IMG/VR virus record: IMGVR_UViG_3300022698_000267
Location: 62,001-126,000 of that record
Direction: 5' to 3' (one strand)
Length of the DNA stretch: 64,000 nt
Shown here: one piece after another, positions 35,213-52,884 of the stretch
How the letters are laid out: every line of letters begins with the position of its first letter
How positions within the stretch are numbered: the first letter of the stretch is position 1
Notes under the pieces: generated by a model
What the model was told of the DNA's origin: nothing
The model's database searches: none
What the model saw: only the letters and a program-made list of their open reading frames with translations
Translations under genes and position numbers: made by a program

Positions 35213-36022
35213 TCAATTTGATTCTTCGATGATTGGGTCTTCTCCATTGAAAATAACTCCTACTCTATTGGTTACTTTAGAAAATACAGGCATATCTAGT
35301 CTTCTAACTTCTGTTCTTTCAATTTCTAGATCAGGATTCTCTCTTGCTTCATGTTTTGGTGGAAGTTTTTCAATTTCTTTAGTATCAAACTTCCTAAGGA
35401 CTGTTCTTTTTTGGAAGTACATTCCTCGTTTAAAATTAGCAGGATAATCATTCCAGTTCACACCTTTTTCAAATAACATTTCCTGCATATCTTTTCCATT
35501 TTTCTTGTGTAATTGTTTGTGGGAATAGTATACTCTTGCTGCCATTGAAATACTATTTTTGGTAGCATCAAATTCTCTCCACAAAATAACATTGGCTGCT
35601 TCTTGTTTAGTCGGGACTTCCCATGCTCTACAATCGAATAGAGCAACTCTGTGTGCTTTTTCAGGAATCATCTTACTTAAATAAGCATTAAAGGTTGCAG
35701 TGGTCACAGAAGTTAAAACAGAAACCATTTTCAATATTTTTCTATCAAAAAATATTTGGCTTTTCAAATTGTCACTGTAATATACCAGACTAATTTCATC
35801 TGATTGTGTATGACCAATACAGGCATTAGTTTCTTTAACAAGAGTATCAACAACAATACCCATTAATTCTGATAGTCTTACATCATAAGGACGTTCTAAT
35901 CCTTTTGTAAATTGACTGAAATTTTTACCATCAATTCGTACACAGATTGGAACCATAGGAAGAAACTTTCGTTTACTTTCACGTCCTTCATACATTTTCA
36001 TTCTGTCGCCTAAATCATCCAT
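35213..36022 (-). CDS. thg1: Thg1-like 3'-5' nucleotidyltransferase (tRNA-His guanylyltransferase family), intact active site
   Basis: DRMKMYE, RIDGKNF, QSDEISL, FDCR, WR..DA.KNSI, GVNWNDYP..FKRG. Confidence 0.93.
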   Translation of the reverse strand: MDDLGDRMKMYEGRESKRKFLPMVPICVRIDGKNFSQFTKGLERPYDVRLSELMGIVVDTLVKETNACIGHTQSDEISLVYYSDNLKSQIFFDRKILKMVSVLTSVTTATFNAYLSKMIPEKAHRVALFDCRAWEVPTKQEAANVILWREFDATKNSISMAARVYYSHKQLHKKNGKDMQEMLFEKGVNWNDYPANFKRGMYFQKRTVLRKFDTKEIEKLPPKHEARENPDLEIERTEVRRLDMPVFSKVTNRVGVIFNGEDPIIEESN

Positions 36023-36036: not shown

Positions 36037-36855
36037 TTATTTTGTATCAACAATTGGGTCTTCTCCATTGAAAATAACTCCTACTCTATTGATTACTTCG
36101 GAAAATGGAGGCATGTCTAATCTTCTGACTTCCGTTCTTTCAAATTTCAGATCAGGATCTTTTCTTGCTATGTGTTTTGGTGGAAGATCTGTAATTTCCT
36201 CTTTATTGAACTTTTTGGAAACTTTTCTTCTTTGGAAAAAAGTTCCTCGTTGAAAACTAACAGGATAATCGTTTTTCCAATCCATATCTTTTTCAAGTAA
36301 CATTGCTAATCTATCTTCTTCATTCTTTCCCAACAATTGTTTATGTGAGTAATATTGTCTTGCTGCTATTGAAATACTTTTTTCAATTGCGACAGTTTCT
36401 TCCCATAGAATAATATTGGCTGCCTCTTCCAATGTTGGGACTCCCCAAGCTTTGCAAGAAAACACAGCAACACGGTGTGCTTTTTCTGGTATTACTTCTG
36501 GAAGGTATCTATTAAATGTTGCAGTAGTTACAGAAGAGATGACAGAAATCATTTTCATTATTTTTCTATCGAAAAATATTTGACCCTTCAAATCGTCATT
36601 GTAATAAATCAGATTGATTTCATTTGATTGTATATACCCAATGCAAGCATTAGTTTCTTTGACAATGGCTTCAGTAACAATCCACATCAAATCTCGCATT
36701 CGTGTATCGAAGGGTTTATCTAATCCTTTTGTAACTCGCTTCCAATCTATACCAGTAACTTGTATACAAATTGGAATCAAGGGCATAAATCTTCGATTAC
36801 TTTCACTACCTTTGTAAAGTCTCGTTCTTTCAAATAAATCGTCTAATTTGTTCAT
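36037..36855 (-). CDS. Thg1-like paralog lacking catalytic residues
   Basis: Collinear with 35213..36022 but QVTG for RIDG, QSNE for QSDE, FSCK for FDCR. Confidence 0.88.
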   Translation of the reverse strand: MNKLDDLFERTRLYKGSESNRRFMPLIPICIQVTGIDWKRVTKGLDKPFDTRMRDLMWIVTEAIVKETNACIGYIQSNEINLIYYNDDLKGQIFFDRKIMKMISVISSVTTATFNRYLPEVIPEKAHRVAVFSCKAWGVPTLEEAANIILWEETVAIEKSISIAARQYYSHKQLLGKNEEDRLAMLLEKDMDWKNDYPVSFQRGTFFQRRKVSKKFNKEEITDLPPKHIARKDPDLKFERTEVRRLDMPPFSEVINRVGVIFNGEDPIVDTK

Positions 36856-37110: not shown

Positions 37111-37596
37111 TCATTTCCTTTCTTTCCAATCAGTTATTTTAAAGGCTCTATCTTCGGTTATGTGAACAGAAAATAATTTATCAAAACCTTCATTCATACT
37201 TGGTATTTCTAATCTTTGATAGCTGGCTATTACAGCTACTTTTGGAAGATTTTTATCAAGTCGTTTTTCATTTCTTTTTATACAGATATCTAAATTTGCC
37301 TGAAAATAAAAACCAATAATCGGCATTTTTACTTTCTTCAATAAGGGAAAGTATTTTTCTCTTTCTTTTTTAGAGGGATTGGTATTATCGATAACCATTG
37401 GTTGTTCTGTTTCAATACAAAATTGAATTAATTTTGATTCTCGATTTCTGGTTTTCAACATATCCAGATTGACTCTTATATGCGTATCTGCAAAGTTCTT
37501 CTGATAGAAGGTTGATTTTCCGGTGGCTGGGATTCCAATAAAAATTATGTTATTCCTTTTCCAAGAAGCTGTTGACTTGTTTGAACTGCTTTCCAT
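37111..37596 (-). CDS. P-loop polynucleotide-kinase-like protein (AAA_33 type)
   Basis: GIPATGKST Walker A, VNLDML, VIDNTN...R, RN..R, EGFD. Confidence 0.88.
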   Translation of the reverse strand: MESSSNKSTASWKRNNIIFIGIPATGKSTFYQKNFADTHIRVNLDMLKTRNRESKLIQFCIETEQPMVIDNTNPSKKEREKYFPLLKKVKMPIIGFYFQANLDICIKRNEKRLDKNLPKVAVIASYQRLEIPSMNEGFDKLFSVHITEDRAFKITDWKERK

Positions 37597-39906: not shown

Positions 39907-40531
39907 AAGTCAAAACATTTCCCTTACTAGAGTAAGTCAAAAATCCTTCTCCAACCAAAATGGATAAAGTATTACTAACTTTACGTTTAAAATTGGCATT
40001 GTCAACCAACCACCCCTCTTCAGCCAAAATCTTTATCAAATCTTCGAAATGTATAATTCCCGGTCCCTCCTTAAAAATTCTAATCAAATTCTTTTTCAAC
40101 GCTCTATAAGGAGCAACATCTTCGGCCCCACGAAACTTCCAAACATCCTTGGAATTAGTAGTGATTTTATTTGAGCAATCGAAATACTCCAAAATCCCGT
40201 CCTCAACCAAGCTGGACAAAGCAGTACGAATATTCTTCTTAAATCCAGCATTACTAATCGGCCACCCCTGCTCAAACAAAATCACCAGCAAATCATTAAA
40301 CGATAAAGTACCCTGTTCCCTTTTAAAAATCGTAATCAAATTCCTCCTTACCGTACTAACAGGAACAAGAATAGACGTCATCTTCTTGCCCTCCTCCCTC
40401 TCTTCCTCCTCCATCTTCTTATGCTCCTCAACTACCATACTCCACTCAAGCCAACCAACTACTTCATCAAGACTTTTTTGCATCGAAACCAAAGAAGAAC
40501 GAATCTTTTCAACATCTTTTCCACTAATCAT
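39893..40531 (-). CDS. Two-repeat winged-helix-like protein (paralog family)
   Basis: Same repeated unit; N-terminal SL.S..KSLDE helix shared. Confidence 0.55.
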   Translation of the reverse strand: MISGKDVEKIRSSLVSMQKSLDEVVGWLEWSMVVEEHKKMEEEEREEGKKMTSILVPVSTVRRNLITIFKREQGTLSFNDLLVILFEQGWPISNAGFKKNIRTALSSLVEDGILEYFDCSNKITTNSKDVWKFRGAEDVAPYRALKKNLIRIFKEGPGIIHFEDLIKILAEEGWLVDNANFKRKVSNTLSILVGEGFLTYSSKGNVLTYAIV

Positions 40532-40809
40532 GACTTATCTCCTCTCTCCAACCACGTACGAATCCTCTGTTTAAAATTCTTCCCATGAATATCCCATCCC
40601 CTCCTAGCAAGAAGAATCATCAAATCCTCAAACGTCAAAGGCTCATCCTCCTCATGAAAAATCTCCTTCAAATCTTTATGCAACGCCTTATAAGGAAGAC
40701 ACTTACCCACCTCAAAAGAAACCCCTCTCTCCTCTGCAACCACATCAATCACAGCATCAAGACTATTTCTAACAGAAACCAAACAAGAATGCAAAACTTC
40801 CAAATCCAT
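40528..40809 (-). CDS. Single-repeat member of the same family
   Basis: PYKALHKDLKEIF..E...LTFEDL..LL...GWDI; start at MDLEVL with SD GGGAGG. Confidence 0.55.
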   Translation of the reverse strand: MDLEVLHSCLVSVRNSLDAVIDVVAEERGVSFEVGKCLPYKALHKDLKEIFHEEDEPLTFEDLMILLARRGWDIHGKNFKQRIRTWLERGDKS

Positions 40810-40822
40810 AAAAATACCTCCC

Positions 40823-41074
40823 CTACTGAACCGGTAAAGTAACAGGAGGAATATCCATACCACCTTCCAACCTGTCAGCACACTCCCTCAAAGCAGTTAC
40901 CATATCACCACGCTCAGCATTCGAAATATAGTTACTAACACCAGGCCTACCAAAATCAAAAACCAACAAAGCAAATCCCATCTCCCCAACAGTCTGATTT
41001 ATAACCTCCTCAATAGACAAACCCAAAATCTTCATAAATTCTTCTGTCTTCCTCTGCTTCTCAATATCATCCAA
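40823..41074 (-). CDS. Conserved small hypothetical protein
   Basis: GFALLVFDFG...NYISNAER.DM..ALRE pattern; SD GGAGG, TTG start. Confidence 0.6.
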   Translation of the reverse strand: MDDIEKQRKTEEFMKILGLSIEEVINQTVGEMGFALLVFDFGRPGVSNYISNAERGDMVTALRECADRLEGGMDIPPVTLPVQ

Positions 41075-41099
41075 AACAAATCCTCCAAAAATATTCAGT

Positions 41100-41770
41100 A
41101 GTAAATCATAGTTTAGTAGATTTTCGACACAAGTTACAGACCGAAATCAAGACGATCCAAAAAAATCCTGAAGAAAAGAAAGTAGAATTTCGACAAAAGA
41201 AGAAGAACGAGTCTTAACCAAAAAAACAGAAAAGAAGAAAAAGAAACCTTACCTAAAGAAAAAATTCTAAAACAAAAAGAAAGTAAAGAAAAAGAAACCT
41301 AATAAGGAAAGGTAAACAAAAAGAAAGGAAGTACCTTATTTGAAAGTAAGGAAAGGGGTAGTCTAGAAGGACTGTATTGATTAGAAGAGAAAGTCTATAA
41401 AGTTTGTTCTAGATATTTTTATAGGTAGAATAGGAGATTTACTTGTATTGTAGGCAGAAAAAACCTCTAGTTTTGTGTAGTGGATGTATTCTAGATGTTT
41501 TTCTAGGAAGTAATGAGGCATTACTTGTATTGTAGGCAGAAAAAGTCTATAGAGTTTACTCTAGATGTTTTTATAGGAAGTAATGAGGGTATTCTACTGT
41601 TTATTGACAGAAAAAACCTCTATTTTAGGAAGACTCATCGAAAAAATTAAAAGTTGCTAAAACCCCATACTGCGGCTTCAAACAATCCCTTCCTCATTTA
41701 TAAGAAGAAATCTGCTATAAAGGCTCTGGAAGTGGACATGAAAATTCTAGAGTCGTTCTAGAAGGAGTCT
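41100..41770. repeat. Non-coding block: A-rich tract then imperfect direct repeats (origin or terminus candidate)
   Basis: TTACTTGTATTGTAGGCAGAAAAA at 41439 and 41521; TCTAGATRTTTTTMTAGG at 41408, 41490, 41560; C/G skew flips here. Confidence 0.7.
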
Positions 41771-42430
41771 AAAGTCATTCTAGAATTTCTGATAGTACTT
41801 CCCAAAAAGATTTTTTAACACTATACTAACGTAAAGTCCCTCAGAGAAGGTGGCAGAGGATTTGGCAAGTTCGTATATAACGAAGGCACATATTACGAAG
41901 GGTAGAAGCAATGCTGTAAAGAATTTTTCCATAGCTTCTGCAACTAAAGGATTATTCCTCACGAAATTCTTTAATAAAAGTTTCATCGTGGGAATTTCCT
42001 TTCCACAGGTTCGAATCTTTTACAATCGAACTTCTTTACTTTACCAGTTGAGAGGTACGTTGTCCCCATATAGTCTGGACATTTCTTTGGATCTATCTGG
42101 TAATTCTTATTTTTATTCTTTCTACATCGTTCACAAAGATCATTTTCATCAAACATACTTTAATCCTCCTTTAACGATGTTTTTCTATTTCGATTCGAAA
42201 GATAAACAATCGAAGTGGAAGATTCCATTTCTTTCGTAACTCTTTTCCTTACATTTTGGGCAGTTTTGTGGAGTGAGTGTATAAAGACCCTTTTTATTAT
42301 GCTTACATTCTGGGCAGACTTCGTTTACTATTTGATTAACTTCCATTTTATACATCCTTTCTTCTAAATGAGGGATTTATTCGCAGTATGTAGGCTAATG
42401 AAGATGCTTCCCAATACCCTTATATACCTT

Positions 42431-42745
42431 TTACCCTTCATTAGCCTGTACATCAGTCTTACTAAATGTAACGCCGTCTTTTTCATTTATATGTTCTCGC
42501 AATTGTTCGATTGCAGATTTATAACCATAAATTGTATCGATAACATCATTAACTTCTTGTTCTGGATATCCTTCATCGATGAGTATTTGTCTAGTCATTT
42601 CAAGAAAGACCTTTGCCTCTTTACTGTTAAAAGCTTTAAGGAAAGCTAGTGTGGATAGAGTACCAGTGGTTTCAGTTAAGATTTGTTGTCTAACTGAAGG
42701 AGTGACTGTTTTGTTTTCAAATAGATTTTTAAGAAGATTTTTCAT
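42431..42745 (-). CDS. Hypothetical protein
   Basis: SD GGAGGT; TACTAAA upstream. Confidence 0.7.
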   Translation of the reverse strand: MKNLLKNLFENKTVTPSVRQQILTETTGTLSTLAFLKAFNSKEAKVFLEMTRQILIDEGYPEQEVNDVIDTIYGYKSAIEQLREHINEKDGVTFSKTDVQANEG

Positions 42746-42780
42746 TGCTACCTCCTCTTCTTCTTTAGTTTAGTATCTTC

Positions 42781-43025
42781 TTTCGATAATTAGTAACTTG
42801 CGTTAACTTAATGCTCAAAGCGACCGCAGGTTACTACGTAACCTGTATATAGAAGATTTCTTCTTTGTCTTTCGAAAATGCGAAAGCTGCGTTAACTATA
42901 TTTCCAAGGCTTTCGAAAATGCGAAAGCTGCGTTAACTAGGTAGAACAAAACTCGGACGAACACTTCGACCGTAAGTTACTACGTAACTTATATATAGGC
43001 GAAAATGAGATAACTGCGTTAACTT
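42781..43025. repeat. Non-coding block with iteron-like repeats and two covarying palindromes
   Basis: 30-nt perfect repeat at 42869 and 42910; TGCGTTAACT x4; CAGGTTAC-TAC-GTAACCTG and TAAGTTAC-TAC-GTAACTTA. Confidence 0.85.
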
Positions 43026-43178
43026 AGGAGAGACAATCTTCTTTATGCCAGACAACAATCTTCTTGCTTTCTCTCAGGTACCTTTCTTTTTCTTCTTCAG
43101 CTTTGTGATGCTCGATTATTGCAAGGATGATTAAAGTTGTACAGATGATGGCAGCAATTATTGTAAAAGTGATGAACA

Positions 43179-43805
43179 TTACCGAACCCTCCTGGAACTA
43201 GCAAGTGAAGATCTTATTAGGTATGAACTTGCGACTAACACATCTAGCGCTTGTAATGCTCGATACGTTTTAAATGGCAGTTTAGTGTATTGATAACTAG
43301 TCTTTATTTTTGTTCCATCTGAAATTTCTTGTTTGATTTTTAGACGATTTCCTTCCATAACCATGGTTTGTGAACCAATACCTCTTCTACCATCTTCGAG
43401 AATTAGTTCAATGGAACCAATAGGTTTATACGTTAACTGTATTGTGTTTGAATTCGTTAACAATTCCTCTTTATATAGTTTTGTTGTTGTATCAATTCCT
43501 AAATCCCCAGCTTTTCTGGCTTTGTTTAATGTTGTTAGTATTCGAATCATGTAGTCAGATTTTTTACTTTCTTTCTCATCGAATATTTTTTGTACAGCAG
43601 CACTGAACCCACTTACAAAACAATCGTTAAAAGCATTATTTGTTCTTAATCTATACTTTGTGATGTTTTGTTCTGTATTGAGTTTTGAAATCAATTGTTT
43701 TATTTTGGGTTCTTGCTCTGTTCCATTCCAATTTGCAAGTAAGAATTCCCACCATATTTCTGCACTTTGAATTTTGGTAGGCATTACAAAATCTACTTCA
43801 GCCAT
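43179..43805 (-). CDS. Hypothetical protein
   Basis: SD AAGGAG; 208 aa. Confidence 0.7.
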   Translation of the reverse strand: MAEVDFVMPTKIQSAEIWWEFLLANWNGTEQEPKIKQLISKLNTEQNITKYRLRTNNAFNDCFVSGFSAAVQKIFDEKESKKSDYMIRILTTLNKARKAGDLGIDTTTKLYKEELLTNSNTIQLTYKPIGSIELILEDGRRGIGSQTMVMEGNRLKIKQEISDGTKIKTSYQYTKLPFKTYRALQALDVLVASSYLIRSSLASSRRVR

Positions 43806-43865
43806 GATTTTCTCCTTTCATTTCTTATGTTTTAATATTTTTTAAGAATAATGTCAAAAACTCTC

Positions 43866-43894
43866 TTGACTTTCCATTACAAAACCTATATAAT
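43866..43894 (+). promoter_or_regulatory. Early sigma70-type promoter
   Basis: TTGACT-17-TATAAT. Confidence 0.8.
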
Positions 43895-44243
43895 ATTCGT
43901 AAGTTAAATATAATTTAAATAGTAGCAAGAGGAGGTGAAAATGATACATGATTAATGCTAATCTGGCAGCTCTAATTTCTAGTGGACTTACAACTCTACT
44001 TTCTAAAAACATAGATAATGGGGAAGTCATAGATTCTCAGACCCAAGGATGTACACAGGGATGGAATAAACCCAAGTCAAAATCTAAGGGACGACCTGGA
44101 ACATGGGCCTACGTCGAGAAAGAAGCTCTTGCAGATTTGGATAGAAGCAATGCTCTCAGTGATGAAGAGATGGAAGAAATCTATGCTGCAGCTCGTGCTA
44201 GGGGATATGAACTCTAATTGAATGTGAAGGAGGTAACTAGTGT

Positions 44244-44702
44244 ATGCCAGATGTCTATGTGGAGTACTTAACTAACTACAAGAAGAAAGAATGGGGACCT
44301 TTAACTTATGCCAAACCCGGTGACGCTTGTTTTGATCTTCGTGCTGCCATTAAGAATTCGCAAGTTTTAATGAAGGACCAAGTTGCTGTAATTTCTACGG
44401 GTGTAAAGTTTGCTATTCCGGAGGGTTATGAAATACAAATCCGTCCCAGGTCTGGCTTTGCATCTAAGAATAGTGTCATTATTGTTAACTCGCCTGGAAC
44501 CATTGACAGTGGTTATCGAGGTGAAGTAAAAGTGGCTCTACTTTCTTGCTCCCGTTCGGGGGTTGTTATACAACCTGGTGCCAGAATTGCTCAGGCGAAA
44601 TTGGCAGAAGTTCTTCAACTCAATTTTATTGAGACCAATGATGTTGCCACATCATTTGAGTCTGAAAGAGGTGAAGGGGGATTTGGATCAACTGGTAACT
44701 AA
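44244..44702 (+). CDS. dut: Trimeric dUTPase
   Basis: ACFDL, RPRSG, GTIDSGYRGEV, RIAQ, RGEGGFGSTG. Confidence 0.97.
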   Translation: MPDVYVEYLTNYKKKEWGPLTYAKPGDACFDLRAAIKNSQVLMKDQVAVISTGVKFAIPEGYEIQIRPRSGFASKNSVIIVNSPGTIDSGYRGEVKVALLSCSRSGVVIQPGARIAQAKLAEVLQLNFIETNDVATSFESERGEGGFGSTGN

Positions 44703-44722
44703 CTAAACCGGGAGATAACTAA

Positions 44723-45754
44723 ATGACTTCGGATTTAACTATAATAGCAAATGACAGTTTGGTTCTAGAAAAGAAGATGTTGGGTTTTTTAAAGCATACC
44801 AGATTATTCTTCGAGAACATCATCACTTATCTAAAAGGAAAACGGTTAACTAAAAGCAATTTTCGTATTGAAGACACTTCAGTTGTTCCTAACTACATAA
44901 CTGACATTGAAGAAATTTTGGATAGAGGTGAAGAACTTGTTGTTCTGGAGCATATTGTTAACGAACTTCATCCAAAAAGATGTTTCCTTTTTGATATGAT
45001 GCAGGAGCTAATGAAGAGTGAAGTTCTTTCTGATGAAGAGAGAAACAAGGCTAAATCCATTTGTGATGATTATTTACAGAAAGTTGTTTGGAGACTTTGT
45101 AACTCAGAATTATCTTTGGTAAAGAAAAAAGCTGGAAGTATTGCTCGTGGAGTAACTAGTGTTTCTTTCCAGGATAAAGTGGGTTATGGTTATGAAGGAT
45201 TGTTAAAGGCAGCTCATAAATTTGATTTCGAAAAGGGGATCAAATTTAATACCTATGCTTCTTGGTGGATTTGGGAAAGTATTTTGAATGGATGTAACAA
45301 TGAAATGTACTTTTTGAAGGTTGAAAGTCCAAAACAACAGAAGTACATAAAATTTCTATCATCCAGTCGAAAAAGAGATGGAAAAGAATCCACTCATTTG
45401 TCTTCATCTGAACTATTAGAGATTTATGCAGCATGTAACATTGCTTCTGTATATGGCGAAGATGGTGAAGACCATTCTGATTTGAAGATCGATGATAGTA
45501 ATTCAGAAGTTTTCTACCATAGTAATCCCGAAAACATTTTAAATATTTCTCAGAATCCCAGATCAATGTTAGAAGATACAATAAATACTAAATTGAATAA
45601 GGATGAGAGAAAGATTTTAACTCATTACTATGGTATTTTGGATTGTAGAAAACGATCAGAGAGTCAATTATGTCGTTCCTTTGGTTTTACGATAACACAA
45701 TTGAGAGATAAAATTCAGGAAATTCTCTCTAAGATAAGGGAAGACATGATATAA
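44723..45754 (+). CDS. Phage-encoded sigma70-family RNA polymerase sigma factor
   Basis: Region 2 GLLKAAHKFDFEKGIKFNTYASWWI; degenerate region 4 (L...ERKIL..YYG...IL.KIR). Confidence 0.88.
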   Translation: MTSDLTIIANDSLVLEKKMLGFLKHTRLFFENIITYLKGKRLTKSNFRIEDTSVVPNYITDIEEILDRGEELVVLEHIVNELHPKRCFLFDMMQELMKSEVLSDEERNKAKSICDDYLQKVVWRLCNSELSLVKKKAGSIARGVTSVSFQDKVGYGYEGLLKAAHKFDFEKGIKFNTYASWWIWESILNGCNNEMYFLKVESPKQQKYIKFLSSSRKRDGKESTHLSSSELLEIYAACNIASVYGEDGEDHSDLKIDDSNSEVFYHSNPENILNISQNPRSMLEDTINTKLNKDERKILTHYYGILDCRKRSESQLCRSFGFTITQLRDKIQEILSKIREDMI

Positions 45755-46439
45755 CTACGTGGAGGACACTATGGAAGAAACAAGTAACCCCGCATTCTTT
45801 GTCCCGGTTAATTTTTTGGGTTTTGTAACTATGATGGGAAAAGGAACGGAAGAGGAAAGAGATTCTTTAACAAAATCTCTTACAGAAGTTAGGAAGTCAG
45901 AGGAAGTTCAACGTAAATTCTTCGAAATTTCCAAATTTATATCCGAAAGGTTTGGAATAAATTTCCTTATGGTTCCTAGGTTCTTAGAAATTAGTGATAA
46001 AAATGAACATAAGGACCATATATCTAGCTTTTTAGCCTTTCTTGCAGAGGCAGAAGGTTCTTATGAGGAAGATGATGAAGCAAGTTTGATTCCAAAATGA
46101 CAGATTTAACTAACTCAGATTCTAATCTTCCCGCCACTACTAACTCGGATTCCGAATTAAGTACCGAGTTTTCAGAATCCCTTTCTTATGTTAAGAAAGA
46201 ACTTCTAGATACTCTAGAATATATTGATGGCCAATTGGACGACATCGCAGAGAAGACAAAAGGTGTAACTAGGTTTTCTCGAAATATTTTTGAAATGAAG
46301 AAACTATTTGTTGAGCAGAGATTAAATTTATTGAAACAACTGTCAAGTTTAGCAGTTGATAAGAAGCGTAATGAAAAAGAAGGGGATAAAGATTTACCTA
46401 ATATTTCTGAAATTTTAGGTGCAAAGTAGGAGGTGAGAT

Positions 46440-47145: not shown

Positions 47146-47454
47146 ATGAAGGACAAGAACAGTTTTTCAGAGGAGTTGTTTAGAAGAATCGAAGAAAAGT
47201 ATCCATCCATGGCCACCAATTTTACAAAAAAGGACGCTGCAACATTGACGAATGAATTCATCGATTGTTTGAAGGACGTCATCAAAGATGGGGAGCCCAT
47301 TCGGTTTCATGGTTTTGGTATTTTTGAATTGTACGCTTCTAAACGAAGAAAGGGGCGAAATCCCCAAACCGGCGAATCGATTGATATTCCGCCAAGAAAG
47401 AAAGTTAAGTTTCGTACATCCAAAAGCTTTGCTGATCAAGTTATCAATCTCTAA
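47146..47454 (+). CDS. hup: HU/IHF family DNA-binding protein
   Basis: GFGIF, RKGRNPQTGESIDIP, VKFRTSK. Confidence 0.95.
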   Translation: MKDKNSFSEELFRRIEEKYPSMATNFTKKDAATLTNEFIDCLKDVIKDGEPIRFHGFGIFELYASKRRKGRNPQTGESIDIPPRKKVKFRTSKSFADQVINL

Positions 47455-47566: not shown

Positions 47567-47596
47567 GAACTATTTGTATATTTTTTCATAAAATAC

Positions 47597-47625
47597 TTGA
47601 CTTTTCTACACCTTTATTATATATT
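47597..47625 (+). promoter_or_regulatory. Early sigma70-type promoter
   Basis: TTGACT-17-TATATT. Confidence 0.7.
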
Positions 47626-47825
47626 AGTTTACATTTGGAAATCAGAGAGGTTAATTTACTAATGAAAGAAAAGAAACCATCATTGGCACCAGAGACAAAA
47701 GAGTATATACGAAATAAGGTTAAGGAGCTTGGTTCATTGGCAGCAGTTAAGAGATTGTACAAAGAAGACTGTTTGGTTGATAACTTTGCTAACAATTTTG
47801 CCAAACGTTTTTATAAGGATGAAGA

Positions 47826-48179
47826 ATGAAATGTCTACAGTGTGGTCGATGTTGTTTCTATGCTGTAATCATTATTAAGCCAGAATCTATATCAGAAGAT
47901 CTTGATATGGACTGTTTAACTGATGATGACTTAATGGCTTTGGATGGTACAGAGAAATGTCCTCATTTAACTTGGGAAGGACGTAAAGCTTTTTGTAACA
48001 TTCATCATTACGATTGGTTTCCAGATACACCTTGTGGACAGTTTACACAGATCGAAGCATCACCTCATAGTTTTTGTCGTATTGGGAAGAATATGTTAGA
48101 TCCAAAGAATGAAGATTTATGGCGAAGGATTACTTTTAGAACCTGGGAAGATGAAATAGAGGAGACAAATGAAAAATAA
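47826..48179 (+). CDS. YkgJ-like CxxCxxCC cysteine-cluster protein
   Basis: CLQCGRCC, CPHL, CNIH, PC. Confidence 0.7.
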   Translation: MKCLQCGRCCFYAVIIIKPESISEDLDMDCLTDDDLMALDGTEKCPHLTWEGRKAFCNIHHYDWFPDTPCGQFTQIEASPHSFCRIGKNMLDPKNEDLWRRITFRTWEDEIEETNEK

Positions 48180-49080
48180 ATATCAGTCTTTAACTAAAGA
48201 AGAAAGATTTAAGGGATCTTTGGTTGGTTTGGCAACAGGAGACGCATTGGGTGCTTCTCTAGAGTTTATACATACGATACCAAATCCTCCTTTAACTGAA
48301 ATGACAGATGGTTATTGGACTGATGATACATCTATGGCTCTTTGCACTGTTCATAGTCTTATCGACAGAAGGACTTTTGATTTAAGAAATCAAATGGAAA
48401 ATTTTGTCAGTTGGTACACCAGAGGCTTTCTTAGCAGCAGAGGTTACTGTTTTGATATTGGCAACAGAACAAGAGAAGCTTTAGAAGATTACATGTTGCT
48501 TGATCAAATAACTGAAGGAGTAGATCCCCATGATGACAATTTGAGCAATGGTTCATTGATGCGATTGGCTCCAGTACCTTTATTTTATTACAATAATGTA
48601 GAATTAGCAGCAAAGAGAAGTAAACAGCATACATTACTAACTCATCCTAGTCAAATGTGTGTTGATGCGTCTGCATGTCTTTCAACTTTCATAACTTGTT
48701 GTTTTCATGATCATCTAGGGAAACATGCTTTGGTAGAAGATGTTGCTAACTATCGTAACGACCTTTTTCCAAGTTTAAGTAACTGGTTTGATGATTACTT
48801 ACTTAATCCAAGGAAACCAGATACCAGCAAACATGTTGGTTACGTAATGACATCTTTAGAGATGGCCTTGTGGGCTTTTTTAACTACACCTAACTTTGAG
48901 GAAGGATGTATATTATGTGTTAACAATGGTGGTGATACTGATACCTATGCAGCTATATATGGACAGTTAGCTGGTGCCTACTATGGTTACAAAAGTATAC
49001 CAGAGAGGTGGACAAAGAAACTTATTCAACACAAGATTATTTGTGATTATGCTAAGATTCTTTGTGATATAACTGCTTAA
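48169..49080 (+). CDS. ADP-ribosylglycohydrolase (DraG/ARH family)
   Basis: GDALGA, WTDDT, FDIG, NGSLMRLAP, TH, GGDTDT.AAI.GQLAGA.YG. Confidence 0.95.
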   Translation: MKNKYQSLTKEERFKGSLVGLATGDALGASLEFIHTIPNPPLTEMTDGYWTDDTSMALCTVHSLIDRRTFDLRNQMENFVSWYTRGFLSSRGYCFDIGNRTREALEDYMLLDQITEGVDPHDDNLSNGSLMRLAPVPLFYYNNVELAAKRSKQHTLLTHPSQMCVDASACLSTFITCCFHDHLGKHALVEDVANYRNDLFPSLSNWFDDYLLNPRKPDTSKHVGYVMTSLEMALWAFLTTPNFEEGCILCVNNGGDTDTYAAIYGQLAGAYYGYKSIPERWTKKLIQHKIICDYAKILCDITA

Positions 49081-49622
49081 AATATTTGAAATATAACTTC
49101 TGATATGAATTCAATTCTAACTACGTTCTTTGGTAAGTTATCATGTGTATTCCATTCAGGATGATTAATTAGAAAAACTTTTTCCATCCCTTCACTACAT
49201 TGCAAAGCAACATCGATTCTATCATCCGTCCAGAATTTGATGTTGTTTTTCATTAGATACTCAAACTTCTCATGATTGTCTTTCAGAACTAATGCAACAT
49301 CATCACCAAATTGCTTATTACACCATTTCTGTGTAACTTCTTGTAACCCTGGGTACCTAGCAGTAACTATTGGAACAGGTTGACTTGTTAACTTTCGAAT
49401 GGTTTTGATGGCTGTTTTAACTTCTATTTCAGGTTCCAAGTGATTTTTGGTAAGATGTGTTAAAGCATCCCTGATTTCTTGTTTAATCTCCTCCTCAGAA
49501 ACTCCTGGAATAACTATTCTTTCGATAGGACTTTTTATTTCATAGCCCAATCGATTCTTTAACTCAATTTTCATGTAGTCATATGTGTTGACTATTGTAT
49601 CGTCCAAATCAAAAGCAATCAT
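49077..49622 (-). CDS. HAD 5'(3')-deoxyribonucleotidase-like phosphatase
   Basis: IAFDLDDT, IVTAR, K, DDR, WN. Confidence 0.85.
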   Translation of the reverse strand: MIAFDLDDTIVNTYDYMKIELKNRLGYEIKSPIERIVIPGVSEEEIKQEIRDALTHLTKNHLEPEIEVKTAIKTIRKLTSQPVPIVTARYPGLQEVTQKWCNKQFGDDVALVLKDNHEKFEYLMKNNIKFWTDDRIDVALQCSEGMEKVFLINHPEWNTHDNLPKNVVRIEFISEVIFQIF

Positions 49623-49674
49623 AAAACCTCCATTTTTATTAATATTTTAGTATATAAAAATATTCAAATAGTAC

Positions 49675-49703
49675 TTGACTTTTCACCTAATATACTATAT
49701 AAT
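49675..49703 (+). promoter_or_regulatory. Early sigma70-type promoter
   Basis: TTCAAATAGTAC-TTGACT-17-TATAAT. Confidence 0.88.
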
Positions 49704-49731
49704 GGTTTAAATTTAAAAGGGAGGTAGCAAA

Positions 49732-49860
49732 ATGGTCGACAAAGGTAAGGTCTGGTTGAGGTGTATGGAGTGTGGTAATAAGTTTTCACGATCACTTTCC
49801 AAAAGTCTTTACAATGTCAAATGTCCCAAATGTAAATCCTATGATGTGGAGGTGGACTGA
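49732..49860 (+). CDS. 42-aa zinc-ribbon protein (not in ORF track)
   Basis: CMECG...CPKCKS; SD GGGAGGT; first gene behind promoter 49675. Confidence 0.75.
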   Translation: MVDKGKVWLRCMECGNKFSRSLSKSLYNVKCPKCKSYDVEVD

Positions 49861-50076
49861 TGAGAGACCCAAATAGAACAGCATTTTTTATTTTGGACGA
49901 AAGAGAAGAACGTCGAGTTGCCAATCGGGGCATTGCCGCTAGAAACCGGGATTATCGAGAAACCCTCCGGCTTACCGGAGACCGGCGTGCTGCCACCAGA
50001 GCGTACTGTGCCGGTAACAAATGGCTCATGGAGAATGCACGAGCCTGTGGAAATCTTCCCTAACATCCCCTCCCCC

Positions 50077-50104
50077 TACGGGCTCCCGGAAACGGGGGTC
50101 CGTA
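50077..50104 (+). terminator. GC hairpin with GAAA tetraloop
   Basis: TACGGGCTCCCG-GAAA-CGGGGGTCCGTA. Confidence 0.65.
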
Positions 50105-50232
50105 CCCCTCTAAAGTACCTCTATTTTTCCTCATATGAACCTCATTCTATATGCTCTAAGACACAACGACGCATATTTTATCGTCTGTCTTTTCTTTCGC
50201 AAAATAAAGCAGAAATTTTCTTCAAATAATAC

Positions 50233-50261
50233 TTGACTTTTAGTTCAACACCTTATATAAT
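50233..50261 (+). promoter_or_regulatory. Early sigma70-type promoter
   Basis: TTGACT-17-TATAAT. Confidence 0.88.
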
Positions 50262-50288
50262 ATAGGAAATTTAAAAGGGAGGTAGTAA

Positions 50289-50498
50289 ATGGGAGATACA
50301 TCGTATCAGGAAAAAGATTTTGGTGATGAGGAAATATGGGCCAAATGTGAAACCTTGGAACAGTTTGAAGATTGGTGCATCGATGGTTTCTGGGAGGATC
50401 CAGAGGATTTTGAAAGTGATACTGGAATCACATTCGAGGATATCGAAGGCAGATGGTTCCAGTTTGTTCATGATCGGGTCTATATTAAGACAGATTAA
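50289..50498 (+). CDS. Highly acidic early protein
   Basis: 22 D/E vs 5 K/R in 69 aa; SD GGGAGGT. Confidence 0.75.
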   Translation: MGDTSYQEKDFGDEEIWAKCETLEQFEDWCIDGFWEDPEDFESDTGITFEDIEGRWFQFVHDRVYIKTD

Positions 50499-50985
50499 GG
50501 AGGATTAAATGCGACATCTCACAGCAAAAAACAAAGATAATTTTTTCTCTCGTTTGAAAGTTGGTGACAAGTTTACATCTTCTCCAGATGACTTTATTGG
50601 TAAAGATGTTCATCGACTTGCTAAACAGCAGGGCGTTCTGGTTCGGTATTTTCGGCCGGGAACACTAGAATACAAAGAATTTGGCTGCTTCACTTATCAA
50701 GTTACAAGTTACTTGTGTTCCTTGCAGAAACTTAAAGGGTTAACGGTGGATTGTGTACGTGGCATTCGTACTGATCAGAGAATTAAGAGTGGATTTTCAC
50801 CACAATACATTCTATTTACGGATGAGAAAACGTACATGGCATTGGAGGAACAAGATTATTATACTTATCATGATTGTAATTTCAATGCACGTTGCCTTCG
50901 AATAGAAGAAGATGAACGTATGTGGAAAATAATTAAGGAAGATTTGAAACGTTACCCGGAAGCAGACATCGATTAGAGGTTAACT

Positions 50986-51486
50986 ATGGATTATACCATT
51001 GGTCCTGTGAAAAAATGCGTGGGTTGTGGGTTCTGTTGCATGCAAGCACCATGTGCTGCTTCTGTCAGGCTTTACCCTGGAGCTAAGATTTGTCCTCAAC
51101 TTATCTGGGATGAAGCATTGGAGAGGTATTTATGTGGTCTTATGCAACTTCCTGGTTCGGTTGGCCTGGCTTACAAACAGGAGTTGTATGCGGGAGCTGG
51201 TTGCTGTAGCAACTTGAATTCTTGGAGAAGGAACGTAAAGAATAGACATCCAGTTGACAAGAAGGATAAGCTGTTAACTATAGATCCAATGTTTCAACTG
51301 TTTCTTAACTGCCTTGGACGTGAGTGGATAAGCAGTGATGTATTGGTATTAACAGTTTCGGCTTTCATGTTGAAATTAGTTAATCATATGGATATGACTG
51401 AAGATGAAGCACAGAGGTACGGTGAGCTGGTTACCCATTATATGAAAGATAATACACCAAGTTACCTGAAAGAATTTATGGGATAA
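50986..51486 (+). CDS. CxxCxxCC cysteine-cluster protein
   Basis: CVGCGFCC..APC, CPQL, CGL, GCC. Confidence 0.65.
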   Translation: MDYTIGPVKKCVGCGFCCMQAPCAASVRLYPGAKICPQLIWDEALERYLCGLMQLPGSVGLAYKQELYAGAGCCSNLNSWRRNVKNRHPVDKKDKLLTIDPMFQLFLNCLGREWISSDVLVLTVSAFMLKLVNHMDMTEDEAQRYGELVTHYMKDNTPSYLKEFMG

Positions 51487-51500
51487 TATTCAAAAAGTAC

Positions 51501-51529
51501 TTGACATTTTCAAATTTATACTATATAAT
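51501..51529 (+). promoter_or_regulatory. Early sigma70-type promoter
   Basis: TTGACA-17-TATAAT. Confidence 0.9.
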
Positions 51530-51584
51530 ATGAACAAGTGGTTGGGGATAGGGTAAATGTAAATTTTAGAAAAGGAGAAAGGCT

Positions 51585-51869
51585 ATGCTGTTAGATGAAT
51601 TGACTGCGTATTTCGATCTTAAAGCTCAGGCCGAAGAGATTAAGAAACAGATGACTGAGATTCGGGCGTCTATTCAATCTCAATTACCGGGAAATTCCAC
51701 CAAAACGTTGGTTCATACAGAGGATGGTTTAGTGACACTGCAGACGAGATCCCGTCTTAACAGAAAATGTAAGTGGGATGCTTTTGCAGTAGCAAACCCG
51801 GAACTTTACAACCAGGTGGTCACTGAATCTGAAACCACGTATTTCACCATTTCCAAAAAGCAACATTAA
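51585..51869 (+). CDS. Early hypothetical protein (coiled-coil N-terminus)
   Basis: SD AAGGAG; own promoter. Confidence 0.7.
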   Translation: MLLDELTAYFDLKAQAEEIKKQMTEIRASIQSQLPGNSTKTLVHTEDGLVTLQTRSRLNRKCKWDAFAVANPELYNQVVTESETTYFTISKKQH

Positions 51870-51881
51870 AAGGAAGGAGAT

Positions 51882-51899
51882 TAGGGGCTTCGGCCCCTA
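51882..51899 (+). terminator. GGGGC-TTCG-GCCCC hairpin (family also at 52890, 54104, 54865, 55303, 59266)
   Basis: cUUCGg or cUUCAg loop hairpins right after stop codons. Confidence 0.75.
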
Positions 51900-51927
51900 T
51901 TTCTATGTAAAAATATTCAAATAGTAC

Positions 51928-51956
51928 TTGACATTTTTATCAAATTCTGTTATACT
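51928..51956 (+). promoter_or_regulatory. Early sigma70-type promoter
   Basis: TTGACA-17-TATACT with extended -10 TG. Confidence 0.9.
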
Positions 51957-51999
51957 ATAGTTAATGGTTAAGGAGAAAGTTTTAAGAAGGAGATAACAG

Positions 52000-52347
52000 A
52001 TGGAACCAAATATGATTAATGTTGATGAAATTACTCCAACGGCAAAAGATGTCGAAAGAGCAGAAGGTCTTCGATGGCAGCGGAATACTTTCCATGGAGA
52101 TAATTCTCCGTTCAGGGGTCAGGCTGCTAAGATGGCGAAGTTAATCAGGGACCCAAAGAAGCTTGTGCGTAGAGCTAAGGCAGTCTATAACTTATATGGG
52201 TGCAATGATTATTTTGGCGACTTACCCCCTGGACAATGGATAGATCCGGAGTGGAAAGCAACGAAGGATGCTTGGAGACCATTTGCTAATGCTTTGAAGA
52301 AAATGGGATTCTCCTGGACGCAGATCAGGTCCATTTGCAATCGATAA
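52000..52347 (+). CDS. Early hypothetical protein
   Basis: SD AAGGAG; own promoter. Confidence 0.7.
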   Translation: MEPNMINVDEITPTAKDVERAEGLRWQRNTFHGDNSPFRGQAAKMAKLIRDPKKLVRRAKAVYNLYGCNDYFGDLPPGQWIDPEWKATKDAWRPFANALKKMGFSWTQIRSICNR

Positions 52348-52372
52348 TTTTTAAAAAATCTTCATAAAGTAC

Positions 52373-52401
52373 TTGACATTTTATTAAAATTTTGTTATAC
52401 T
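52373..52401 (+). promoter_or_regulatory. Early sigma70-type promoter
   Basis: TTGACA-17-TATACT with TG. Confidence 0.9.
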
Positions 52402-52455
52402 ACTTTTAAGTGGTTAGGGAAATTAAACGTTAATTTTAAAGAGGGAGGTAACAAA

Positions 52456-52884
52456 ATGGTTTTAAATGAAATGTCTGTTCAGGCCCTGAAGAAGTTCCAG
52501 GAGAAGAAAACCAGCAACAAAGATGTGGACAAGCGGTTTGAAGCAATGGGTGAGCTGGTCCAAGAATTGTCGGAGGTTTATGAGATTGCTTGTCCTCGGC
52601 TTCGTATGAAAGATATCGACGGTTCCTATTCCGGTGGGTCTACGTTCGATCCTGATGAGAATATCATCACCATGCGTGGAAAACTCTCCATTATAACCCT
52701 TCTTCATGAATTTGCTCATGCTTTGCTGCATTCTTCTGCACCGGATTTGCATGATACCAACCGCCGGGATTCAGAAGGGTTCTGCCGAATTTGGAGCGTT
52801 CTCCTTTTCAAAACCGTCTACCCCGAACAATTTGCCAAGCTTTACTATAATGGTGGAAGTTACATTCGCCAGAGAGCAGCTTAA
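52456..52884 (+). CDS. Zincin-like HExxH metallopeptidase domain protein
   Basis: TLLHEFAHAL and downstream E. Confidence 0.65.
   Translation: MVLNEMSVQALKKFQEKKTSNKDVDKRFEAMGELVQELSEVYEIACPRLRMKDIDGSYSGGSTFDPDENIITMRGKLSIITLLHEFAHALLHSSAPDLHDTNRRDSEGFCRIWSVLLFKTVYPEQFAKLYYNGGSYIRQRAA

What the first reader, a model, noticed from the sequence alone, without database searches (positions are those of the whole stretch)
42781..43025. Two hairpins with compensatory base changes interleaved with four iteron-like repeats
Seen: CGACCG-CAGGTTAC-TAC-GTAACCTG-TATATAG (42821-42852) and CGACCG-TAAGTTAC-TAC-GTAACTTA-TATATAG (42967-42998) differ at four positions, which are exactly two compensatory pairs, so the stem is selected as a structure. 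Around them lie four CGA.AAT..TGCGTTAACT units, two being a perfect 30-nt repeat (42869, 42910) with its own CTTTCG/CGAAAG hairpin. Inference: ssDNA/cruciform signal (primase or nicking site, packaging or injection-stop signal, hairpin promoter) or a repeated-domain ncRNA.
Basis: partly seen in the sequence, partly recalled or inferred. Interest (0 to 1): 0.7.

Follow-up and report, generated by a model that had tools for sequence, protein, structure and literature searches.

The report
Conserved repeat-and-hairpin array in jumbo phage
A 280-base gap between genes of an uncultivated 273-kb phage holds six copies of one short repeat, two of which fold into hairpins. The same repeat and hairpin sit at the same map position in five distant relatives, so it is a real functional DNA signal, but what it does is still unknown.

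Summary
Window 42781-43027 holds four bipartite units (U1-U4: TCGAWAAT, about 10 nt, TGC-GTTAACT) and two 32-nt hairpin units (H1, H2) that differ only by two compensatory pairs.

Both motifs are essentially confined to this locus in the 273,563-bp phage genome. The six units are co-oriented and look like one repeat family, 33-53 nt apart. H reads like a U unit whose spacer has become the complement of its GTAAC box.

The decisive new evidence is comparative. Five metagenomic relatives (sigma factor 50-56% identical) carry both elements at the syntenic spot. They hold 24 further U copies, all on the sigma-gene strand. Their hairpins have an invariant apex TAC-TAY-GTA, and the stems covary (5 of 8 pairs; 0 of 500 shuffles reach the score).

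The CTTTCG/CGAAAG hairpin inside U2 and U3 is not conserved.

Hairpin polarity flips among relatives, which favours a DNA-level element. My best reading is an iteron-plus-extrudable-hairpin protein-binding array. I lean to replication initiation or priming and hold it weakly, at 0.35. No AT-rich unwinding region, DnaA box, helical phasing or known initiator gene was found. A transcription switch or an antisense promoter array is almost as likely.

The parts
42781..42811 (+). U1 unit: TTTCGATAATTAG-TAACTTGC-GTTAACTTAA (5' box, spacer, GTTAACT box)
   Evidence: It matches L014 196-223 at 25 of 28 positions.
42818..42852 (+). H1 unit: GCGACCG, then stem 42827-42834 / loop TAC 42835-42837 / stem 42838-42845, then TATATAG
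   Evidence: Folding energy is -6.5 kcal/mol as DNA and -11.5 kcal/mol as RNA on the + strand. Covariation is shown.
42870..42900 (+). U2 unit: TTTCGAAAATGCGAAAGCTGCGTTAACTATA. It contains a non-conserved 6-bp hairpin, CTTTCG/CGAAAG.
42911..42941 (+). U3 unit, identical to U2 over 30 nt and followed by GAACAAAAC
42954..42972 (-). Second small hairpin. On the - strand it reads CGGUCGAA-GUG-UUCGUCCG and is followed by AGUUUUGUUCU (42940-42953). It is a weak candidate terminator for the gp208-gp51 operon and overlaps the CGACCG flank of H2.
   Evidence: The consensus terminator scan did not list it.
42964..42998 (+). H2 unit: TTCGACCG, then stem 42973-42980 / loop TAC / stem 42984-42991, then TATATAG
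   Evidence: Window 42965-42993 is 29/29 identical to the H element at L018 2575-2603.
42997..43027 (+). U4 unit: GGCGAAAATGAGATAACTGCGTTAACTTAG. It overlaps the stop codon of the 51-aa ORF.
42769..42775 (-). TACTAAA -10-like motif, 24 nt upstream of the ATG of the 104-aa ORF. This is the putative promoter of the next leftward operon. U1 lies directly upstream of it.
   Evidence: Of 127 genome copies, 47 lie in the 11% of the genome that is noncoding, on the gene strand and 20-60 nt before start codons.
42431..42745 (-). 104-aa ORF (orphan) with a strong ribosome-binding site. It is the first gene downstream of the array on the - strand.
43024..43179 (-). 51-aa ORF with a hydrophobic, probably membrane-spanning N-terminus. 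Its start overlaps the stop of the 208-aa ORF (ATG/TAA overlap). It ends at the array.
   Evidence: Small ORFs occupy the same place in L013, L014 and L022 (my reading).
43179..43805 (-). 208-aa ORF. Its whole length resembles a protein in L016. Only its N-terminal ~40 aa recur on otherwise different proteins in L013, L014 and L020. A sigma70-like promoter (TTGACA, 17 nt, TAAAAC) lies at 43829-43857 on the - strand.
41983..42355 (-). Two paralogous Zn-ribbon ORFs (56 aa at 42185-42355; 57 aa at 41983-42156). Their homologues lie next to the array in L013, L016, L018 and L020. They are candidate binders (inference only).

Best explanation
**What it is (shown).** The 278-bp spacer 42746-43023 lies between two leftward operons of an uncultivated 273-kb phage. 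It is a tandem array of six co-oriented units of about 32 bp, 33-53 nt apart. I read all six as one repeat family (my reading of the hand line-up).

Each unit has three parts:
- a 5' box, (T)TCGA(A/T)AAT, whose conserved core is GAnAAT;
- about 10 variable bases;
- the box T(G/A)C-GT(T)AACT(A/T).

In U1-U4 the variable part is unstructured. In H1 and H2 it is the exact complement of the GTAAC box, so the unit is a perfect 8+3+8 palindrome. That palindrome can fold as a hairpin on either strand or extrude as a cruciform.

Both unit types are kept at the same map position in five relatives whose proteins are only about 50-70% identical. The position is just past the small ORF that ends the first leftward early operon, 1.7-3.5 kb upstream of the dUTPase-sigma operon.

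**How it most likely works (inferred).** It acts as DNA. Several copies of an unidentified, lineage-specific, sequence-specific protein bind the bipartite U boxes head-to-tail. The palindromes supply an extrudable hairpin with a fixed apex, TAC-TAY-GTA. The hairpin would be the site where a strand is opened, primed or nicked.

This is an origin-type assembly of iterons plus a hairpin, with replication initiation or priming as my preferred role. The conserved neighbouring Zn-ribbon proteins are my guess for the binder.

**How sure.** I put about 0.7 on 'functional cis element with a selected hairpin'. I put about 0.5 on 'acts as DNA rather than RNA'. I put 0.35 on the origin or priming role specifically.
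For: - **Locus specificity.** Both motifs are confined to this locus in the genome.
- **U conservation.** Twenty-eight U units from five phages share tTGAcAAt, 10 nt, tgC-GTTAACTA with fixed box spacing. All lie on the sigma-gene strand. Copy number ranges from at least 2 to 13, and spacing is irregular.
- **H covariation.** Ten H elements from six phages were aligned. Pairing holds in 92.5% of cells, against 65% in shuffles and 21-34% in slid controls. Five of 8 pairs change on both sides. The covariation score is 0.644 against 0.139, and 0 of 500 shuffles reach it. The apex is invariant.
- **H location.** In 80 kb of relatives' DNA, H-type hairpins occur only in the syntenic arrays: 7 found against 0.48 expected.
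- **Depth of conservation.** Window 42965-42993 (H2) is 29/29 identical to L018. The sigma proteins of the two phages are only 53% identical.
- **DNA-level argument.** H polarity relative to U and to the flanking genes flips in L014, L016 and L020. L014 has a 17-bp perfect stem.
- **Similar known architecture.** A hairpin bearing TACTACG with direct repeats nearby is the layout of the pMV158 origin (PMC1851628).
- **Third copy.** Another H-type hairpin lies upstream of a RecG/UvsW-like helicase gene.
- **Conserved neighbours.** Zn-ribbon ORFs sit beside the array in four relatives.
Against: - There is no AT-rich unwinding region, DnaA box or IHF site in or beside the array. It is 53-75% AT, no richer than the genome.
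- U spacing shows no helical phasing.
- No Rep_3, lambda-O, DnaD, RepB or Y1-HUH domain was found in the genome.
- The DNA polymerase gene is about 100 kb away.
- GC skew only tracks gene orientation.
- The TACTACG of H lies across a 3-nt loop and the stem, not in an open loop as in pMV158.
- The GTTAACTA...GAACAA half of U also occurs singly on the coding strand upstream of genes and a tRNA. That fits a transcription or RNA signal better than an origin.
- Perfect palindromes can be kept by template-switch mutation without selection (established knowledge).
- No binding protein has been identified.
Confidence: 0.35

Rival explanations
1. **Transcription control element.** There are two versions.

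(a) The U units are tandem promoters of a phage-specific class that fire on the + strand. They would run antisense into the gp51-gp208 early operon and on toward the dUTPase-sigma operon.

(b) The U units are operators for a regulator. They form a boundary or switch between the early leftward operon and the TACTAAA-type promoter of the 104-aa gene. In this version H acts as an operator or roadblock.
For: - The 5' box resembles a -35 element. It is a perfect TTGACA in five L013 units, at a fixed distance from the second box.
- Four L013 units carry TATAAT right after GTTAAC.
- U orientation is fixed on the sigma strand in all phages.
- TTGACA, 15 nt, TAACTA sites occur singly in intergenic spacers of the + strand gene blocks of relatives (L014 12631 and 12667). 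A weaker one, AAGACA, sits just before a + strand gene at L014 6350, and another, ATGACA, at L013 17737.
- A GTTAACTA sits 5 nt before a tRNA 5' end in the own genome.
- On the - strand, the array is followed by a TACTAAA motif and a gene in the window. By my reading of the sequences this also holds in L013, L018 and L020.
- U1 covers about -20 to -47 of that promoter in the window.
Against: - The best-conserved bases of the 5' box are GAnAA, not TTG.
- The hexamer after GTTAAC is TA[AT][GA].. and rarely fits TAnnnT. Its distance from the -35-like box would be 19 nt.
- The sigma70 consensus scan finds nothing in the spacer.
- Single sites in the own genome have no -35-like box.
- Both flanking genes are on the other strand.
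- In L013 the nearest U is about 130 nt from the TACTAAA motif.
- The role of H is unexplained, and its polarity flips.
Confidence: 0.3
2. **RNA-level element.** The array would be transcribed and work as structured RNA. On the - strand it would be the 3' UTR or leader of the flanking operons. On the + strand it would come from the U promoters. Possible roles are a terminator or stabiliser hairpin, a protein-binding decoy, or a small RNA.
For: - The hairpins fold as RNA: -11.5 and -7.2 kcal/mol on the + strand, and -9.8 and -5.6 on the - strand.
- The whole spacer folds better than shuffles, with z = -2.2 on the - strand and -3.2 on the + strand.
- On the - strand, H2 is followed by a second hairpin and UUUUGUU.
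- The TAACTWNNNNGAMCAA motif lies in the 5' regions of many early genes on the coding strand.
- The stem changes are all transitions, so intermediates could pass through G-U pairs.
Against: - The loop would read GUA in some phages and UAC in others on the gene strand, because H flips.
- There is no Rfam match.
- No U-tract follows H directly, and no terminator was called.
- U units show sequence conservation, not covariation.
- No promoter is evident upstream on the + strand.
- No RNA run was listed.
Confidence: 0.12
3. **Genome-end, packaging or injection-stop signal.** The array would mark or adjoin the physical end of the linear genome next to the early region. It would act as a recognition or processing site for packaging or for staged DNA entry.
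For: - The array lies at the outer edge of the early region. The divergent early promoters are at 43829-43894, and about 45 early promoters follow rightward.
- In L013 tail-fibre-like LamG genes lie only about 2-3 kb to its left.
- Contigs of three relatives, from independent assemblies, end in or at the array.
- Repeat arrays and hairpins flank the ends of T7- and T5-type genomes (established knowledge).
Against: - Contigs also break at repeats and palindromes for purely technical reasons.
- The window's contig and those of L013, L018 and L020 read straight through the array.
- The record has no terminal repeats.
- Only 2x read depth is available and no read-start data.
- No terminase gene is known nearby.
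Confidence: 0.08
4. **Selfish or neutral satellite.** This would be a fast-evolving tandem repeat with a palindrome maintained by template-switch mutation. It would have no function for the phage.
For: - Copy number and spacing vary freely.
- L013 shows 127-nt higher-order repeats at 94-98% identity and a TGACGAA microsatellite.
- U2 and U3 are identical, which suggests recent duplication or conversion.
Against: - The core boxes and the hairpin apex are invariant across phages whose proteins are about half diverged.
- The position is syntenic in all six phages.
- No transposase or HUH gene was found.
Confidence: 0.1

Closest known systems
Iteron-type replication origins (lambda ori, P1 and plasmid oriV, T4 oriE)
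   Same: Several co-oriented direct repeats with a conserved core in a noncoding stretch. Inverted repeats lie nearby. Copy number varies between relatives.
   Different: The units are 27-30 bp and bipartite, with irregular spacing of 26-140 nt. There is no AT-rich unwinding region, no DnaA box, and no recognisable initiator gene. The array is not next to replication genes.
pMV158-family double-strand origin (rolling-circle plasmids)
   Same: A hairpin carries TACTACG, the pMV158 nick sequence being TACTACG/AC. Sets of direct repeats bound by the initiator lie within about 100 bp (PMC1851628). The H apex reads TACTACGTA.
   Different: In H the sequence spans a 3-nt loop and the stem rather than an open loop. 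Only 7 of 9 bases match. No RepB origin-binding domain or other HUH protein was found. This is a 273-kb dsDNA phage with its own PolA.
Phage N4 early hairpin promoters
   Same: Short perfect stems with a 3-nt loop and conserved loop and flanking bases. Stems differ between copies. The elements cluster beside early genes.
   Different: No T7/N4-type RNA polymerase domain was found. The one giant ORF that gave matches is a tail or baseplate protein. The stem is 8 bp or longer, up to 17 bp. Polarity flips among relatives. The phage uses sigma70-type early promoters and its own sigma factor.
phi29 p4/p6 early-late switch region and similar phage regulatory nucleoprotein sites
   Same: Multiple protein-binding repeats lie between an early unit and a late promoter. 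A histone-like protein (HU homologue, window 47146-47454) is encoded nearby and is the best-conserved protein of the region.
   Different: No p4-like regulator has been identified. Sequence and geometry are unrelated. Binding has not been tested.
Repetitive extragenic palindromes (REP/BIME) and other small palindromic repeats
   Same: Short palindromes with a conserved head, found in either orientation in intergenic DNA. Stems covary between copies.
   Different: There are only three copies in the genome. They are tied to one syntenic locus across phages. No RAYT or Y1 transposase is present.

Membership tests
Iteron-type theta origin | Three or more co-oriented direct repeats with a conserved core | tested here: met
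   There are four U units here and 24 in relatives, all on the + strand.
Iteron-type theta origin | Repeats phased with the helix (about 11, 22 or 33 bp) | tested here: not met
   Start-to-start spacing is 89, 41 and 86 nt here and 26-140 nt in L013.
Iteron-type theta origin | Adjacent AT-rich unwinding element, with DnaA or IHF sites | tested here: not met
   There is no DnaA box and no IHF consensus in the spacer. The one near-match to a DnaA box in 41000-44300 lies at 42658, inside the 104-aa ORF. AT content is 53-75% in 40-nt windows. The nearest A-rich tract is 1.4 kb away, at 41150-41350.
Iteron-type theta origin | Cognate initiator gene (Rep_3, lambda O, DnaD-like) | tested here: not met
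   PF01051, PF04492 and PF07261 have no match in the genome. A novel initiator cannot be excluded.
pMV158-type rolling-circle origin | Nick sequence TACTACG/AC exposed in the loop of a hairpin | tested here: not met
   H has TACTACGTA, but the loop is only TAC and the rest is paired.
pMV158-type rolling-circle origin | HUH initiator (RepB origin-binding domain) | tested here: not met
   PF01719 has no match and PF01797 has no match.
N4-type hairpin promoter | Virion RNA polymerase of the T7-like fold | tested here: inconclusive
   PF00940 has no match, but the control genomes gave no signal either. The 3620-aa ORF is a tail or baseplate protein and the 2442-aa ORF has no match.
N4-type hairpin promoter | Fixed polarity relative to the transcribed early genes | tested here: not met
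   The loop reads TAC on the + strand in the window, L013 and L018. It reads GTA in L014, L016 and L020.
Sigma70-type promoter | -35 TTGACA and -10 TATAAT separated by 16-18 nt | tested here: not met
   The scan finds none in 42746-43023. U has a -35-like box, but the TA-rich hexamer is 19 nt away and rarely fits TAnnnT.
Intrinsic terminator | GC-rich stem directly followed by a T run | tested here: not met
   No site was called in the spacer. H is followed by TATATAG on the + strand and CGGTCG on the - strand. A weak candidate lies at 42940-42972 on the - strand.
Known RNA family (Rfam) | Match to a covariance model | tested here: not met
   There is no match at E up to 1 in 40000-46000. No tRNA or tmRNA was found in the window.
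Site-specific recombination site (att or res) | Recombinase gene in the genome | tested here: not met
   PF00589 and PF00239 have no match.

The most novel reading that the evidence does not exclude
The array would be a new kind of initiation site for a giant phage. A hairpin with the fixed apex TACTACGTA would be extruded and then nicked or primed by an unrecognised enzyme. The conserved neighbouring Zn-ribbon proteins might be part of that enzyme. The enzyme would be loaded by the bipartite GAnAAT...GTTAACTA repeats. This would be a plasmid-like 'hairpin plus iterons' origin logic working in a 273-kb dsDNA virus, with a second site near the helicase gene.
Probability: 0.12. Interest if true: 0.8.

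Novelty: new variant of a known kind. Interest (0 to 1): 0.55.

Why it matters
Origins, switches and other cis-acting signals of uncultivated giant phages are almost unknown, because annotation sees only proteins.

This noncoding element is defined at base resolution. It has a repeat consensus, a hairpin with proven covariation and an invariant apex, a conserved map position, and candidate partner genes.

That gives experimenters concrete DNA probes for finding the binding protein. It also gives genome miners a signature for recognising this phage lineage and for explaining why its contigs break.

If the hairpin proves to be a nicking or priming site, it would link plasmid-type initiation logic to jumbo phages.

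Tried and rejected
- **DNA and protein similarity searches.** blastn of the locus against 50,697 phage records found nothing. tblastn and profile searches of the flanking ORFs found that gp208 and gp104 are orphans. Atlas searches gave only chance-level hits on low-confidence models.
- **Pattern scans of IMG/VR.** Scans for paired TGCGTTAACT and for the hairpin found only unrelated coding or tandem repeats, or nothing.
- **Metagenome scan.** None of the 120 loci returned is a relative.
- **IMG/VR relatives of the sigma factor.** All are below 35% identity.
- **Sequencing runs.** Only one wetland DNA run holds the phage, at 2x depth, and it has nothing over the locus. No RNA run was listed.
- **Complex prediction.** The sigma factor with U2 DNA was not folded by the tool, so it is no evidence either way.
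- **Hypotheses considered and set aside.**
  - Dispersed phage promoter motif: the motif is locus-specific.
  - GTTAAC as a depleted restriction site: 48 copies observed against 56 expected.
  - T7-type promoter.
  - Rolling-circle or HUH origin.
  - att or res site.
  - 'GGACCCCCCAAACA', a motif shared by the relatives' arrays, is absent from this genome.
  - Resemblances that I recalled from memory and did not test: E. coli Ter sites, rrn boxA, SPO1 late -35, and CRISPR repeats.

Full report
**Context.** The window is bases 62001-126000 of a single 273,563-bp virus record. The record is 35.8% G+C, is estimated 97% complete, and has no end repeats. The only other public trace is a wetland metagenome run at about 2x depth. 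The phage encodes its own sigma factor (44723-45754) and a dUTPase (44244-44702) on the + strand.

The finding lies in the 278-bp spacer 42746-43023, between two minus-strand ORFs:
- a 51-aa ORF with a hydrophobic N-terminus (43024-43179), which is coupled to a 208-aa ORF;
- a 104-aa ORF (42431-42745) with a strong ribosome-binding site.

**Checking the observation.** H1 (42821-42852) and H2 (42967-42998) differ at four positions, and these are the two partners of two stem pairs. The positional coincidence alone has probability 7.8e-4.

The four U units carry TGCGTTAACT. That 10-mer has five copies in the whole genome, four of them here. The hairpin motif is unique to the locus. U2 and U3 share a perfect 30-nt repeat.

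All six start with (T)TCGA and carry GT(T)AAC(T/C)T about 15 nt later. They are co-oriented and lie 37, 52, 41, 53 and 33 nt apart. So H appears to be a U-type unit whose spacer has become the complement of its own GTAAC box. This is my reading of a hand alignment and has not been tested statistically.

**Transcription map (my inference from motif statistics).** About 45 host-type promoters (ttcaaaWagtACTTGACa, 17 nt, TATAMT) cover genome 109.6-157 kb on the + strand. A second motif, TACTAAA, sits 20-60 nt before the start codons of many other genes on the correct strand. Of its 127 copies, 47 lie in the 11% of the genome that is noncoding.

One TACTAAA copy (42769-42775, - strand) lies 24 nt before the 104-aa gene, directly beside U1. 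The 208-aa gene has a sigma70-like promoter at 43829-43857. The array therefore separates a leftward early-type operon from a leftward TACTAAA-type operon.

**Relatives.** The flanking ORFs are orphans. The sigma factor, however, has six relatives at 50-56% identity on metagenome contigs. Their loci are L013, L014/L015, L016/L017, L018/L019, L020/L021 and L022. They share the gene order: small ORF, dUTPase, sigma, two small ORFs, metallopeptidase, HU homologue.

In every locus that reaches far enough, a noncoding repeat array occupies the syntenic place. It lies past the minus-strand gene or genes next to the divergent promoter region. The arrays contain U units with the same boxes and box spacing, always on the sigma strand:
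- 13 in L013;
- 6 in L018;
- 3 in L014 and 2 in L022, both cut by the contig end;
- a CTAACTA variant in L020.

The consensus of 28 units is tTGAcAAt, 10 nt, tgC-GTTAACTA. The highest information is at GA.AA and C-GTTAACT-A. U1 matches an L014 unit at 25 of 28 bases.

**The hairpin in relatives.** H-type hairpins occur in the arrays of L013 (two), L014, L016, L018 (two) and L020. Window 42965-42993 (H2) is 29/29 identical to L018. The other phages keep the apex TAC-TAY-GTA but have different stems: TATAC, ATATATAC (17 bp in all), TGGGTAC, and ACGGTTAC (8 of 10 bp).

I aligned ten elements, including a third copy in this genome at 48,858-48,874, and counted pairs:
- 92.5% of cells pair, against 65% in column shuffles and 21-34% when the partner is slid;
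- 5 of 8 pairs change on both sides, in 20 cells;
- the covariation score is 0.644 against 0.139, and 0 of 500 shuffles reach it.

In 80 kb of relatives' DNA such hairpins occur only in the arrays: 7 against 0.48 expected. The elements were found by their apex and stem, so some selection bias exists. All apex matches in the arrays that are not U units have stems of 5 bp or more.

The small hairpin inside U2 and U3 is not shared by any other unit.

**DNA or RNA?** The hairpin has a polarity, set by the loop TAY and a 5' flank (A/G)ACCG in five of ten copies. The TAC strand is the sigma strand in the window, L013 and L018. It is the opposite strand in L014, L016 and L020.

A transcript from a fixed strand would therefore carry different loops in different phages. 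That favours action as DNA, either as a cruciform or as a hairpin on either strand. Other relevant points:
- The U units show sequence conservation, not covariation.
- There is no Rfam match.
- No RNA data could be found.
- Folding energies are modest: -4.4 to -6.6 kcal/mol as DNA, and -5.6 to -11.5 as RNA.

**Which function?**

*Origin features.* Some are met: co-oriented bipartite repeats, palindromes, variable copy number, and a hairpin carrying the pMV158 nick heptamer TACTACG with direct repeats nearby. Others are not met:
- no AT-rich region, DnaA box or IHF site;
- no helical phasing;
- no Rep_3, lambda-O, DnaD, RepB or Y1 domain;
- PolA is about 100 kb away.

*Promoter features.* The 5' box looks like a -35 element, and TTGACA, 15 nt, TAACTA sites occur singly in intergenic spacers of the + strand gene blocks of relatives. 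Against this:
- the conserved bases are GAnAA rather than TTG;
- there is no usable -10 hexamer at 16-18 nt;
- the 18 single TAACTWNNNNGAMCAA sites in this genome lack the 5' box;
- the local genes are on the other strand.

*Other readings.* Recombination sites are unlikely because no integrase or resolvase was found. A genome-end role is suggested only by contigs of three relatives ending at the array and by the array's place at the edge of the early region. Repeats and palindromes break assemblies anyway.

**Verdict.** The element is real, conserved and under selection. The hairpin's structure is supported by covariation.

I read it as a DNA-level array that binds a protein and carries an extrudable hairpin. 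I lean weakly to replication initiation or priming (0.35). A transcription switch or antisense promoter array is close behind (0.30). The remaining readings are:
- an RNA element (0.12);
- a satellite (0.10);
- an end or packaging signal (0.08).

The binding partner is unknown. The Zn-ribbon ORFs that accompany the array in four relatives are the obvious first candidates, but this is inference only.

Noticed in passing
window 41075-41780: A second repeat-rich noncoding stretch lies 1 kb away. It holds three units of about 82 nt containing TCTAGA (41406, 41488, 41558) and a 200-nt A-rich tract (41150-41350). It ends at another TACTAAA motif (41112, - strand) before an 83-aa ORF.
   Followed up: partly
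window 41742-41788: A long imperfect hairpin (AAATTCTAGAGTCGTTCTAGA / TCTAAAGTCATTCTAGAATTT) sits at the end of the 68-aa ORF. The TTCTAGA-rich sequence recurs in L018 and L020. It is probably the terminator of the gp104...gp68 operon.
   Followed up: partly
window 47595-62752 and on to genome 157 kb: About 45 near-identical sigma70-type early promoters (ttcaaaWagtACTTGACa, 17 nt, TATAMT) lie on the + strand. Many are followed by a shared leader, TTTAAGTGGTTGGGGA. The same promoter class and leader occur in the relatives.
   Followed up: partly
window 42769, 41112, 37866, 35002 (- strand); 3883, 22069, 32499 (+ strand); and genome-wide: The TACTAAA motif sits 20-60 nt upstream of the start codons of non-early genes on the gene strand. 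It is probably the -10-like promoter element used with the phage sigma factor.
   Followed up: partly
genome 130,700-157,213, outside the window (L223:157-313 for the tandem copies): A rigid motif, TAACTWNNNNGAMCAA, occurs 18 times, all on the + strand. It often lies between a tRNA 3' end or a GC hairpin and a start codon. Four copies are in tandem, CTAACTTAATGAMCAAA with GC-rich spacers, at 157,057-157,213. It shares the GTTAACTA...GAACAA half of the U unit.
   Followed up: partly
genome 48,858-48,874 (L222:259-275): A third H-type hairpin, CAATTAC-TAC-GTAATTG, is preceded by three TAACTA copies. It lies in the long spacer upstream of a RecG/UvsW-like helicase gene (genome 49,270-51,954).
   Followed up: partly
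window 35213-36022, 36037-36855, 37111-37596 (- strand): Two tandem Thg1-like (tRNA-His guanylyltransferase family) genes and a polynucleotide-kinase/ligase-like gene lie here. The phage also carries a large tRNA cluster. One tRNA begins 5 nt after a GTTAACTA motif (genome 141,408).
   Followed up: no
window 43179-43805 (- strand): The first ~40 residues of the 208-aa protein recur at the N-terminus of otherwise unrelated, larger proteins at the same position in L013, L014 and L020. One of those has a SPRY domain. This looks like a shared N-terminal module on a variable early protein.
   Followed up: no
L013:4275-5191 and 7026-7466: The relative's locus carries further satellites: 8 copies of CAAGTCTCTTCT, about 20-nt TTATTTCC repeats, and a TGACGAA microsatellite inside the U array.
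   Followed up: no
genome 60,334-61,044 (just left of the window) and 131,056-131,856: These spacers hold tRNA-like pieces interrupted by other sequence, so tRNA genes there may be split or intron-bearing. Weak PolA-like fragments with stop codons lie at genome 130,873-131,067.
   Followed up: no
genome 1-800 and 266,000-273,563: Both contig ends fall in paralogous serine-rich, LamG-type tail-fibre-like genes. The record's ends are probably assembly breaks rather than true termini.
   Followed up: no
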